This document shows, one piece after another, positions 48,786 through 49,469 of a stretch of 64,000 nt of DNA (its first letter is position 1; each line of letters begins with the position of its first letter). The notes below the pieces were generated by a model. The model searched no databases, was not told the DNA's origin, and saw nothing but the letters and a program-made list of their open reading frames with translations. A program made the translations under genes and the position numbers. The stretch covers positions 186,001 through 250,000 of IMG/VR virus record IMGVR_UViG_3300048591_000147; one strand, given 5' to 3'.

Positions 48786-49469
48786 ATGGGCTATCATCTA
48801 AGAACAATAACAAAACGTCAGGTAGGCACCATCGAAAAGGTTCTTGAGGAAGTTGAAGAATATCAGGATGCCATGGAACAGGGTTGCGAAATCATGGCGC
48901 TTGTAGAACTCTCTGACATTTATGGCGCACTACAATTAGTTGTAGAAAAACACAATAAGACCATGGAAGATTTAAAAGCCATGGCAACAGTCACACGTCG
49001 TGCATTCGAAGATGGTAGTAGAAAATCATCTGAAAGCTCCCCACCCAAAACAGTAATTTATGGTGACGTGTATGAGGGAGATGTCATCTCTCAACGTCCC
49101 AAATCTGAAATCGAAGCAATAGAAACAATTGTAGCCGAATTCAACGCTTACGATAAAGACTTGCGATTTGACATGAATTCTAATACAGTAGATGTATCAG
49201 TGGTACATTTACCGACTGGACTGATCGCCAATTGCAACCAATATCCAAATCTGCTAGCCAATAAAAAACACGCTTTACTAAATTTAGCTGTATTATTGTA
49301 TGATCATAGGCAATCTGAAAAAATACAAGACATAAAGAAAAGATTTAAAGAAACACTTAAAGCTCCCGGTGTCCCTTTAATAATGCCGCACACTAGTTAT
49401 GGATGTGGCTGTGGACGTGGGAATGATTGTTGTTTGGTCAAAGAACATATCACTAACAAATTCGGATAG
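48786..49469 (+). CDS. MazG-like N-terminal domain fused to a release-factor (RF-1 domain)-like segment lacking GGQ
   Basis: EEVEE...ELSD (MazG-type acidic motif); DLRFD...VVHLPTGLIANC...NK.HAL..L. Confidence 0.6.
   Translation: MGYHLRTITKRQVGTIEKVLEEVEEYQDAMEQGCEIMALVELSDIYGALQLVVEKHNKTMEDLKAMATVTRRAFEDGSRKSSESSPPKTVIYGDVYEGDVISQRPKSEIEAIETIVAEFNAYDKDLRFDMNSNTVDVSVVHLPTGLIANCNQYPNLLANKKHALLNLAVLLYDHRQSEKIQDIKKRFKETLKAPGVPLIMPHTSYGCGCGRGNDCCLVKEHITNKFG

What the first reader, a model, noticed from the sequence alone, without database searches (positions are those of the whole stretch)
48786..49469. MazG-like domain fused to a release-factor domain with the GGQ loop deleted
Seen: residues ~123-175 read DKDLRFDMNSNTVDVSVVHLPTGLIANCNQYPNLLANKKHALLNL. 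Known: RF1/RF2/ArfB domain 3 reads DLRID..RSSG.GGQHVN.TDSA.RITHLPTGI.V.CQ.ERSQH.NK..AL..L. The flanks align, but the catalytic GGQ loop is missing. The N-terminal ~80 aa carry a MazG-type EE..E...E..D motif. Inference: a catalytically dead RF mimic that could target a nucleotide pyrophosphatase to ribosomes, act as a decoy, or modulate termination, including the UAG two genes downstream.
Basis: partly seen in the sequence, partly recalled or inferred. Interest (0 to 1): 0.7.

Follow-up and report, generated by a model that had tools for sequence, protein, structure and literature searches.

The report
Phage MazG-like protein with dead release-factor domain
A jumbo phage encodes a protein that joins a small nucleotide-pyrophosphatase-like domain to a piece of a bacterial translation release factor whose catalytic GGQ loop has been cleanly removed; the piece cannot release peptides but is kept by selection, and similar disabled release-factor domains turn out to be common and unstudied in phages.

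Summary
ORF 48786..49469 (+, 227 aa) has two confidently folded domains. Residues 1-80 form a HisE/MazG-type all-alpha domain with an invariant E22-x2-E25-x15-E41-x2-D44 motif. Residues 105-190 are a true homolog of class-I release-factor domain 3 (profile vs PDB E 2e-11; structural Z 8-9). One 11-residue gap lies exactly over the GGQ loop, and the neighbouring Q and RSQ residues are also lost. There are no codon-reading domains, so the protein is neither a release factor nor an ArfB. The RF-like domain is under purifying selection (dN/dS 0.25). It recurs in about nine relatives from one jumbo-phage sub-lineage. There it has been appended to a widespread two-gene module: the MazG-like protein plus a mini class-II aaRS-like enzyme. 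GGQ-less RF-1 domains are frequent in phages generally (11 of 23 motif hits), with varied loop fates. The function is unproven. My best reading is an exapted binding/adaptor domain directed at the translation apparatus. The link to the downstream UAG is only circumstantial. That UAG, and a phage tRNA(CUA), are conserved in cultured relatives that lack the RF-derived domain. A sponge-like ligand-binding role is a live rival.

The parts
48786..49469 (+). Whole ORF, 227 aa, two-domain fusion protein (stop codon TAG 49467-49469; in-frame back-up TGA at 49476-49478)
   Evidence: nine fused relatives
48786..49025 (+). N-domain (res 1-80): HisE/MazG-like all-alpha domain, PHROG 6408; three helices 16-31, 35-55, 60-75
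   Evidence: E 6.5e-32; 2a7w, 6j2l; PRA-PH weak in 8/13; dN/dS 0.09
48846..48917 (+). Acidic metal-binding-type motif E22-x2-E25 (48846-48860) ... E41-x2-D44 (48906-48917), invariant in all 13 homologs
49026..49097 (+). Disordered acidic linker (res 81-104), variable in length and sequence
   Evidence: pLDDT <50; alignment; dN/dS 0.49
49098..49355 (+). C-domain (res 105-190): release-factor domain 3 (RF-1/PF00472) homolog, alpha-beta-beta-beta-alpha, without GGQ loop
   Evidence: dN/dS 0.25
49173..49178 (+). Junction M130|N131 where 11 residues (the GGQ loop of RFs) are missing
   Evidence: HMMER alignments; group alignment
49356..49466 (+). Disordered tail (res 191-227) with Cys-rich Y-G-C-G-C-G-R-G-N-D-C-C (49398-49433). 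Present in only 3 relatives and destroyed by indels in the closest relative, so probably dispensable
49475..50071 (+). Conserved downstream partner gene: mini class-II aaRS-like enzyme (198 aa, PHROG 4806) with motif 2 and motif 3 invariant. It follows the N-domain gene in every lineage examined
   Evidence: synteny
48215..48784 (+). Upstream metallophosphoesterase (PHROG 547); adjacent here and in L067 only
45016..45612 (+). tRNA array (Ser-GCU, Met, Ser-GGA, Gln-CUG). In relatives L003, L005 and L006 it ends 24-150 nt upstream of the fusion gene
50138..51010 (+). HD(+PTH2-like) gene with SD + ATG 50138, seven sense codons, in-frame TAG 50159-50161, then continuous frame (context; the 'UAG two genes downstream')

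Best explanation
The gene encodes a non-catalytic, exapted release-factor domain used as a binding (adaptor) module. Shown: residues 105-190 descend from domain 3 of a class-I release factor, slightly closer to RF1. The whole tip that enters the peptidyl-transferase centre is gone: the 11-residue GGQ loop, the Gln after the conserved Cys, and the RSQ motif. The fold core is kept (DLRxD, V-x-V/I-T-H-x-P-T-G, C, N-K..A..L) and is under purifying selection. No stop-codon-reading domains are present. The domain therefore cannot release peptides or recognise stop codons. Shown: it is fused by a flexible linker to a HisE/MazG-type domain with intact metal-binding carboxylates. In many phages that domain is a free-standing protein whose gene overlaps or abuts that of a mini class-II aaRS-like enzyme, and the same partner gene follows here. 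In other lineages the same N-domain carries unrelated extra domains. The RF-derived domain is thus one of several interchangeable accessory modules. Inferred: in this jumbo-phage sub-lineage the accessory module directs the pyrophosphohydrolase and mini-aaRS pair to a component of the translation apparatus. Candidates are the tRNA acceptor end, the large-subunit A site, or another RNA. This would occur within a phage island of tRNA genes, PTH2-like and HD genes. The substrate is unknown; candidates are a ribosome- or tRNA-associated nucleotide or a pyrophosphorylated species.
For: Homology and loop loss. Fold. Selection: dN/dS of 0.25 for the C-domain against 0.49 for the linker. Motif conservation across nine relatives of 42-89% identity. 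N-domain acidic motif and HisE/MazG fold. N-domain plus mini-aaRS pairing in Phapecoctavirus, Gualtarvirus, Lazarusvirus and a Citromicrobium phage. Different accessory domains on the same N-domain: Kimel orf121 and Citromicrobium gp119. Position directly after a tRNA array in relatives. PTH2-like and HD genes nearby. Precedent for a GGQ-less RF homolog turned RNA-binding protein: PrfB3 (PMC5897788). RF-1-domain genes noted inside tRNA arrays of mycobacteriophages: PMC5966550.
Against: No direct evidence of any binding partner. An isolated GGQ domain (ArfB delta101-140) shows no ribosome association (PMC3950681), and here the PTC-inserting loop is also missing. The domain is about neutral in charge, so there is no obvious RNA-binding surface. 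In other phages the N-domain plus mini-aaRS pair sits among nucleotide-metabolism genes, not translation genes. tRNA proximity is no more frequent for GGQ-less than for GGQ-containing viral RF-1 genes, at 3/11 against 3/12. The complex prediction with the neighbour gave no answer.
Confidence: 0.35

Rival explanations
1. Sponge-like or regulatory ligand-binding domain. The alpha-beta-beta-beta-alpha RF-derived fold has been reused to bind a nucleotide or second messenger, as the structurally similar Acb4 anti-CBASS sponge does. It either sequesters the ligand or presents it to the fused pyrophosphohydrolase, as part of counter-defence.
For: Acb4's nearest cellular structural relatives include peptide chain release factors (PMC11722364). 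Other GGQ-less RF-1 mini-proteins sit among accessory or anti-defence genes. These include Acb2/Tad1-hairpin genes (L007/L008, L010/L011), NADAR, and Lar. One lies directly downstream of an HD_4 RelA/SpoT-type hydrolase. One is a tandem duplicate (P0014), which suits an oligomeric binder better than an A-site ligand. Here the domain is fused to a nucleotide hydrolase-like domain.
Against: There is no sequence match to the Acb4 family PF13876 in the protein or the genome. Acb4 is absent from the top structural matches. By sequence the domain is unambiguously RF-1. There is no positively charged pocket signal, as net charge is about -1. Oligomerisation was not shown.
Confidence: 0.2
2. Termination antagonist within an amber-suppression module. 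The dead RF domain competes with, or titrates a partner of, host RF1/RF2 (for example the ribosomal A site or the PrmC methyltransferase). This would lower termination and favour the phage tRNA(CUA) at the conserved UAG of the HD gene.
For: The genome encodes a tRNA(CUA). In relative L005 a tRNA(CUA) lies 24 nt upstream of the fusion gene, followed by the mini-aaRS and the UAG-containing HD gene. In Acinetobacter phage Kimel a GGQ-to-RRW RF-1 mini-gene lies ~360 nt from a tRNA array that includes tRNA(CUA). The layout echoes the 'code-change module' of suppressor tRNA plus aaRS plus RF (bioRxiv 10.1101/2021.08.26.457843).
Against: Xoo-sp13 and RAS14 have the early in-frame UAG and a tRNA(CUA) but no RF-1 domain, so read-through does not need it. 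The protein has no codon-reading domains, so no UAG specificity is possible. The isolated GGQ domain lacks ribosome affinity. The GGQ loop, the part that PrmC modifies, is deleted. Phages with the N-domain and mini-aaRS pair (nieznany, Rgz1) have no tRNA(CUA).
Confidence: 0.15
3. Decaying remnant: a captured release-factor fragment with no function of its own.
For: The catalytic loop is lost, the Cys-rich tail is variable and frameshifted in the closest relative, and no cultured phage carries the fusion.
Against: dN/dS is 0.25 over the domain against 0.49 in the linker. The core motifs are kept in nine relatives down to 42% identity. The fold is confidently predicted. Independent GGQ-less RF-1 domains persist in many phage lineages.
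Confidence: 0.03

Closest known systems
Class-I release factors RF1/RF2 (domain 3, Pfam PF00472 RF-1)
   Same: The C-domain is homologous in sequence and superposes in structure, with the same alpha-beta-beta-beta-alpha topology and the tight H-x-P-T-G beta2-beta3 turn typical of RF1/RF2. It is slightly closer to RF1.
   Different: It has no GGQ loop, no Q/RSQ tip residues, and no domains 1, 2 or 4 (PCRF, PxT/SPF). It is fused to an unrelated N-domain and scores below the Pfam gathering threshold as a single sequence (22.8 vs 35 bits).
ArfB (YaeJ) / ICT1 / C12orf65 stand-alone GGQ-domain rescue factors
   Same: A small protein containing only the RF-1 domain, without codon readers.
   Different: Those keep GGQ, have an inserted helix between beta2 and beta3, and need a basic C-terminal tail for ribosome binding (PMC3950681). 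Here there is no GGQ, no insert, and the tail is weakly charged and dispensable.
Plant PrfB3 (RF2 homolog without SPF and GGQ)
   Same: A release-factor derivative that lost its catalytic motif and was recruited to a non-termination, RNA-binding role (PMC5897788).
   Different: PrfB3 is a full-length RF2 paralog in chloroplasts. This protein is a single domain with the loop physically deleted, in a phage, fused to a pyrophosphatase-like domain.
Phage 'RF-1 domain peptide chain release factor' / 'putative peptidyl-tRNA hydrolase' ORFs (PHROG 20323; Acinetobacter phage Kimel orf148; Pseudomonas phage 73 ORF037)
   Same: Small phage RF-1-domain proteins that, on inspection, also lack GGQ: RRW in Kimel and SAW in phage 73. 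Some lie near tRNA arrays.
   Different: They keep a full-length loop and the RSQ motif, are stand-alone, and are annotated as if catalytically active. The window protein has the loop excised and is a fusion.
MazG / HisE (PRA-PH) all-alpha NTP pyrophosphohydrolases
   Same: The N-domain has the E-x2-E...E-x2-D carboxylate motif on helices 1 and 2, and fold matches to HisE and HisIE.
   Different: It has only about 80 residues and three helices, passes no curated Pfam threshold, and has no tested activity. It is always paired with a mini class-II aaRS-like gene.
Acb4 anti-CBASS sponge (PF13876)
   Same: A small phage alpha-beta-beta-beta-alpha protein whose fold resembles RF domain 3. GGQ-less RF-1 minis share its genomic neighbourhoods.
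   Different: There is no detectable sequence relationship, and a tetrameric ligand pocket is not shown here.
'Code-change module' of recoded phages (suppressor tRNA + aaRS + RF)
   Same: The order tRNA(CUA), RF-derived gene, aaRS-like gene, UAG-containing gene is seen in relative L005.
   Different: The genome uses the standard code overall. The RF part is catalytically dead and codon-blind, and the aaRS-like part is a minimal core also found in phages without suppressors.

Membership tests
Class-I peptide chain release factor (RF1/RF2) | RF-1 (GGQ) domain fold and sequence homology | tested here: met
   Profile vs PDB E 2e-11; Z 8-9 to RF1/RF2 domain 3
Class-I peptide chain release factor (RF1/RF2) | Universally conserved GGQ tripeptide in the catalytic loop | tested here: not met
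   11-residue gap over the loop; no GGQ anywhere in the 227 aa
Class-I peptide chain release factor (RF1/RF2) | Codon-recognition domains 2/4 (PCRF, PxT or SPF) | tested here: not met
   No PCRF hit in Pfam at E<=1; the rest of the protein is a HisE-like domain and disordered segments
Pfam PF00472 RF-1 | Score at or above the gathering threshold (35 bits) | tested here: not met
   22.8 bits, E 9.2e-5, profile positions 28-88 only; homology nevertheless robust at profile level
ArfB/ICT1 rescue factors | GGQ motif, inserted helix between beta2 and beta3, and basic C-terminal tail needed for ribosome binding | tested here: not met
   No GGQ; tight H-L-P-T-G turn as in RF1/2; tail net charge +2, disordered, and lost in the closest relative
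MazG/HisE all-alpha NTP pyrophosphohydrolase superfamily | E-x2-E-x(12-28)-E-x2-D metal-binding motif (motif definition from my own knowledge of the superfamily) | tested here: met
   E22-x2-E25-x15-E41-x2-D44, invariant in 13 homologs
MazG/HisE all-alpha NTP pyrophosphohydrolase superfamily | Helical-bundle fold and curated family match | tested here: inconclusive
   Fold hits HisE 2a7w Z 6.1 and HisIE 6j2l Z 7.3, which are middling for helical folds. PRA-PH weak in 8/13 members, best E 6e-4, and MazG in 2/13. Only three helices in the model
MazG/HisE all-alpha NTP pyrophosphohydrolase superfamily | Mg-dependent NTP to NMP + PPi hydrolysis | not testable with these tools
   Needs an enzyme assay
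Acb4 viral sponge (PF13876) | Match to PF13876 | tested here: not met
   Absent from the Pfam scan at E<=1 and from the whole genome at E<=10
Acb4 viral sponge (PF13876) | Tetrameric assembly with basic cyclic-dinucleotide pocket | not tested
Phage code-change module (suppressor tRNA + aaRS + RF) | Suppressor tRNA present and a recoded gene downstream | tested here: met
   tRNA(CUA) in the genome and adjacent in L005; conserved in-frame UAG in the HD gene
Phage code-change module (suppressor tRNA + aaRS + RF) | Functional release factor and a cognate full aaRS | tested here: not met
   The RF part lacks GGQ and codon readers. The aaRS-like gene is a 198-aa core also present in phages without tRNA(CUA)

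The most novel reading that the evidence does not exclude
GGQ-less RF-1 domains are a widespread, unrecognised class of phage accessory proteins that act on host translation termination, ribosome rescue or tRNA-directed defence. In this lineage the domain would form part of a minimal amber-suppression cassette. That cassette comprises tRNA(CUA), a dead RF domain tethered to a pyrophosphohydrolase, a mini class-II aaRS, and a UAG-gated HD/PTH2 gene. It would let a standard-code phage gate a gene's expression on its own suppressor.
Probability: 0.15. Interest if true: 0.85.

Novelty: new variant of a known kind. Interest (0 to 1): 0.6.

Why it matters
Release-factor domain 3 is one of the most conserved catalytic modules in biology, and GGQ is regarded as its defining feature. 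Here it survives under selection with the catalytic loop excised, and about half of a sample of viral RF-1-motif ORFs likewise lack GGQ. This indicates that phages have repeatedly turned the domain into something non-catalytic. Databases currently label such genes 'release factor' or 'peptidyl-tRNA hydrolase', which is misleading. Identifying the partner of the domain could reveal a new way for phages to manipulate translation or evade defence. The candidates are the ribosome, tRNA, an RF-modifying enzyme, or a small-molecule signal. It could also give a function to the very widespread pair of MazG-like and mini-aaRS genes.

Tried and rejected
- DNA-level search of the locus against cultured phages found no match. 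tblastn with the C-domain alone also found nothing.
- The N-domain against PDB, by sequence and by profile, gave nothing significant.
The result was 'no answer' (score 0.02), which I do not use as evidence either way.
- Global stop-codon recoding is rejected. The standard code gives the best ORF structure. The 'SD-ATG, few codons, stop, long ORF' pattern occurs once for TAG, at the HD gene, and twice for TAA.
- The hairpin directly after the UAG is not conserved in L067, so I dropped it.
- The mini-aaRS as a dedicated charger of tRNA(CUA) is rejected as a general function, because nieznany and Rgz1 have the pair but no tRNA(CUA).
- A specific association of GGQ-less RF-1 genes with tRNA genes is not supported: 3/11 against 3/12 for GGQ-containing ones.
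- Net-charge comparison does not discriminate the groups.
- A Rosetta-stone test in Kimel failed. The N-domain gene and the RF-1 mini-gene are ~13.5 kb apart, and orf121's own extension is not RF-like, with hhalign probability 0.1.
- The search for related loci with the divergent domain alignment failed because no stretch was conserved enough. I replaced it with a degenerate DNA motif scan.
- The identity of the tRNA(CUA) could not be assigned from similarity to the phage's other tRNAs.

Full report
**1. The observation**

ORF 48786..49469 (+) is real. It has an ATG start, GGAG 8 nt upstream, 227 codons and a TAG stop.

As a single sequence it matches Pfam RF-1 (PF00472) at E 9.2e-5. That is below the gathering score, and the match covers only profile positions 28-88, which begin after the GGQ position. 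NCBIfam gives the same picture: prfA 5.5e-5, prfB 1.4e-3.

A search of 5.8 billion proteins found the protein itself plus nine relatives with the same two-domain architecture, at 42-89% identity. It also found three proteins sharing only the N-domain.

A profile of the nine C-terminal halves hits mtRF1a, RF1, RF2 and PrfH chains in PDB at E 2e-11 to 1e-8. In every printed alignment there is one 11-residue gap over '(F/K)RASGAGGQHV'. Against 1.84 billion representatives the same profile has 2,050 hits at E<=1e-3. Nearly all are about 11 residues longer over the match.

The AF2 model is confident in both domains (pLDDT 85-92). It has a disordered linker (79-99) and a disordered tail (191-227). 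Residues ~105-190 superpose on RF1/RF2 domain 3 at Z 8-9, rmsd 1.5-3 A, with 62 query residues aligned to 73 target residues.

**2. What exactly was lost**

I aligned 8 fused C-domains, 9 other GGQ-less domains and 125 GGQ-containing RF-1 domains.

- Kept in the GGQ-less proteins: DLRxD, V-R/S-I/V-T-H-x-P-T-G, the Cys after beta3, and N-K..A..L in the long helix.
- Lost: the R-S-S-G-x-G-G-Q-H-V-N loop, the Gln after the Cys, and the (E)RSQ motif. Together these form the whole tip that faces the peptidyl-transferase centre.

There are no PCRF or codon-reading domains. The protein therefore cannot hydrolyse peptidyl-tRNA by the RF mechanism and cannot read stop codons.

It is not a decaying relic. 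Against the closest relative (L067), dN/dS is 0.09 for the N-domain, 0.49 for the linker and 0.25 for the RF-like domain. The Cys-rich tail is destroyed by indels in that relative, so it is probably dispensable.

**3. The N-domain**

Residues 1-80 belong to PHROG 6408, of unknown function (E 6.5e-32). Thirteen homologs keep E21, E22, E24, E25, E41, D44, R71, R72 and E75 invariant. This gives E22-x2-E25-x15-E41-x2-D44, the carboxylate pattern of all-alpha NTP pyrophosphohydrolases (motif definition from my own knowledge).

Fold matches are to HisE (2a7w, Z 6.1), the HisE half of HisIE (6j2l, Z 7.3) and MazG. Pfam PRA-PH is weakly hit by 8 of 13 members and MazG by 2. No curated threshold is passed, and PDB sequence searches found nothing. 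'MazG/HisE-like' is therefore probable but not proven, and no activity is known.

**4. A conserved partner**

tblastn finds the N-domain, and only the N-domain, in 270 cultured phage genomes.

In Phapecoctavirus nieznany, Morganella phage Rgz1 and Acinetobacter phage Kimel, its gene overlaps the start of a ~190-aa mini class-II aaRS-like gene. In Citromicrobium phage RXM it precedes that gene with one small ORF between. The window has the same partner at 49475..50071. Class-II motifs 2 and 3 are invariant across all lineages examined. The predicted fold matches SerRS, HisRS and PylRS catalytic cores at TM 0.76-0.85.

In those other phages the pair sits among nucleotide-metabolism genes: RNR, thymidylate synthase, DHFR, dNMP kinase, ThyX, MazG and glutaredoxin-related genes.

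The N-domain carries different extra domains in different lineages:
- a beta-rich 125-aa extension in Kimel orf121, which is not RF-like (hhalign probability 0.1);
- an unrelated 115-aa extension in the Citromicrobium phage;
- N-terminal extensions in P0011-P0013.

The RF-derived domain is thus one interchangeable accessory module on a conserved core.

A complex prediction of fusion x2 with mini-aaRS x2 gave 'no answer' and is not used as evidence.

**5. Genome and lineage**

The window lies in a complete 314,956-bp phage genome with terminal repeats, 39% GC and 34 tRNA genes. Its capsid is ~60% identical to those of Stenotrophomonas phages CM1 and RAS14 and Xanthomonas phages XacN1 and Xoo-sp13.

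The ORF is the only RF-1-like sequence in the genome. RAS14 has only the stand-alone N-domain, and neither RAS14 nor Xoo-sp13 has any RF-1 domain. The fusion therefore arose within the window's own, uncultured sub-lineage.

In relatives L003, L005 and L006 the fusion gene starts 24-150 nt after a tRNA array. In the window and L067, a VWA protein, small ORFs and a phosphoesterase are inserted between the two. A PTH2-like gene (39763..40143) and an HD+PTH2-like gene lie nearby.

**6. The UAG question**

Two genes downstream there is a strong SD and ATG (50138). Seven sense codons follow, then TGG-TAG (50159-50161), and the frame continues into the HD gene.

The same arrangement occurs in L003, L005 and L067. 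Differences between the TAG and the annotated start are mostly synonymous, so that stretch is translated.

The cultured relatives have it too. Xoo-sp13 reads ATG-AAG-AAG-TAG. RAS14 reads ATG-AAG-TAG, followed by 22 conserved in-frame codons that contain no start codon.

A tRNA(CUA) is present in the window's genome, next to the fusion gene in L005, and in both Xoo-sp13 and RAS14. The three CTA tRNAs I aligned (this genome, L005, Kimel) are not orthologous. The genome otherwise uses the standard code.

This looks like a conserved, gene-specific amber read-through. It is older and broader than the RF-derived fusion, so it cannot depend on it. The L005 order (tRNA(CUA), fusion, mini-aaRS, UAG gene) echoes the 'code-change module' of recoded phages. 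However, phages with the N-domain/mini-aaRS pair can lack tRNA(CUA).

**7. GGQ-less RF-1 domains are common in phages**

Nine of 149 top representatives lack GGQ. They include a tandem two-domain protein (P0014) and 58-75-aa minimal forms.

A degenerate motif scan of viral contigs returned 23 RF-1-core ORFs, 11 of them without GGQ. Their loops are GGR, xxW, shortened or deleted.

Cultured examples are annotated as release factors or peptidyl-tRNA hydrolases. Kimel orf148 has GGQ replaced by RRW and lies beside a tRNA array that includes tRNA(CUA). Pseudomonas phage 73 ORF037 has SAW instead.

The ESM Atlas lists dozens of viral ~80-aa clusters with partial RF-1 signatures.

Several minis lie among counter-defence-type genes: Acb2/Tad1-hairpin, NADAR, Lar and an adjacent HD_4 hydrolase.

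I found no paper describing GGQ loss in phage RF-1 proteins.

**8. Mechanism**

Shown: the domain is a non-catalytic RF domain-3 derivative under selection. It is flexibly tethered to a HisE/MazG-like domain whose gene is coupled to a mini-aaRS gene.

Inferred (confidence 0.35): it acts as a binding or adaptor module directed at the translation apparatus or RNA. PrfB3, an RF2 homolog without SPF and GGQ that binds and stabilises an mRNA (PMC5897788), is a precedent.

Against this reading:
- ArfB's GGQ domain alone does not bind ribosomes (PMC3950681).
- The domain's charge is neutral.
- The pair lies in a nucleotide-metabolism context in other phages.

Rivals:
- A sponge-like or regulatory ligand-binding domain, by analogy with Acb4, whose fold resembles RFs (PMC11722364) although no sequence relationship exists. 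Confidence 0.2.
- A termination antagonist within an amber-suppression cassette. Confidence 0.15.
- A relic. Confidence 0.03.

The remaining probability is for functions I have not thought of.

**9. Verdict**

This is a new variant of a known kind: an RF-1 domain stripped of its catalytic loop, in a novel fusion. It points to a broader, unstudied class of disabled RF-1 domains in phages. Interest 0.6.

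Noticed in passing
window 50138-51010 (TAG at 50159-50161); also L003:8127-8150, L005:1839-1862, L067 ~11319-11342, L069:3423-3434, L070:3427-3435: The HD(+PTH2-like) gene begins with SD + ATG, 2-7 sense codons, an in-frame TAG, then continues in frame. This is conserved in six phages of the XacN1/CM1-like jumbo clade. In RAS14 no start codon exists between the TAG and 22 conserved codons. It looks like programmed amber read-through of one gene in a standard-code phage.
   Followed up: yes
G000:C1:76266-76343 (outside the window); L005:635-710; L071:4292-4367 (Xoo-sp13); L074:1329-1404 (RAS14): Each of these phages encodes a tRNA with anticodon CUA. 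The three CTA tRNAs compared (this genome, L005, Kimel) are not orthologous. The amino-acid identity could not be assigned. RAS14 also has a tRNA with a UUA (ochre) anticodon (L073:16929-17003).
   Followed up: partly
window 49475-50071: Mini class-II aaRS-like gene (198 aa) with invariant motif 2 and motif 3 and no anticodon-binding domain. It is always paired with the MazG-like N-domain gene across unrelated phage families, usually inside nucleotide-metabolism clusters. Its function is unknown and databases call it histidyl- or seryl-tRNA synthetase.
   Followed up: partly
L016:2477-2713 (Acinetobacter phage Kimel orf148); L017:2007-2501 (Pseudomonas phage 73 ORF037): Cultured-phage genes annotated 'RF-1 domain peptide chain release factor' or 'putative peptidyl-tRNA hydrolase' actually have RRW or SAW in place of GGQ, so the annotations imply an activity they probably lack.
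   Followed up: partly
L007:4474-5390 and L008:2280-3196: A tandem double GGQ-less RF-1 protein (P0014, 129 aa, seen in 51 blocks of the collection) sits 15 nt downstream of an HD_4 (RelA/SpoT-type hydrolase) gene, near NADAR and Acb2/Tad1-hairpin genes. This is a second case of a dead RF-1 domain coupled to a phosphohydrolase.
   Followed up: partly
window 49467-49478: The fusion gene ends in TAG, followed two codons later by an in-frame TGA that overlaps the next gene's ATG. In a phage with an amber suppressor this acts as a back-up stop.
   Followed up: no
L067:9417-11043: In the closest relative an IS607-like pair (serine resolvase + TnpB/Cas12f-like) is inserted between the mini-aaRS gene and the HD gene. 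The fusion gene's tail is frameshifted (184-aa ORF + 60-aa ORF).
   Followed up: no
window 45946-48784: A 601-aa VWA-domain protein, two small ORFs and a metallophosphoesterase are present between the tRNA array and the fusion gene here and in L067. They are absent in L003, L005 and L006, where the fusion gene follows the tRNAs directly.
   Followed up: no
L043:1501-1574 (Citromicrobium phage RXM, record 66594-66664): The only tRNA gene of this 104-kb phage (Trp-CCA) lies 23 nt upstream of its N-domain-homolog gene, between two 'MazG' genes.
   Followed up: no
window 39763-40143: Stand-alone PTH2-like gene (PHROG 1866, E 1e-31; the L003 homolog carries Pfam PTH2). The phage thus has two PTH2-like domains within about 11 kb.
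   Followed up: no
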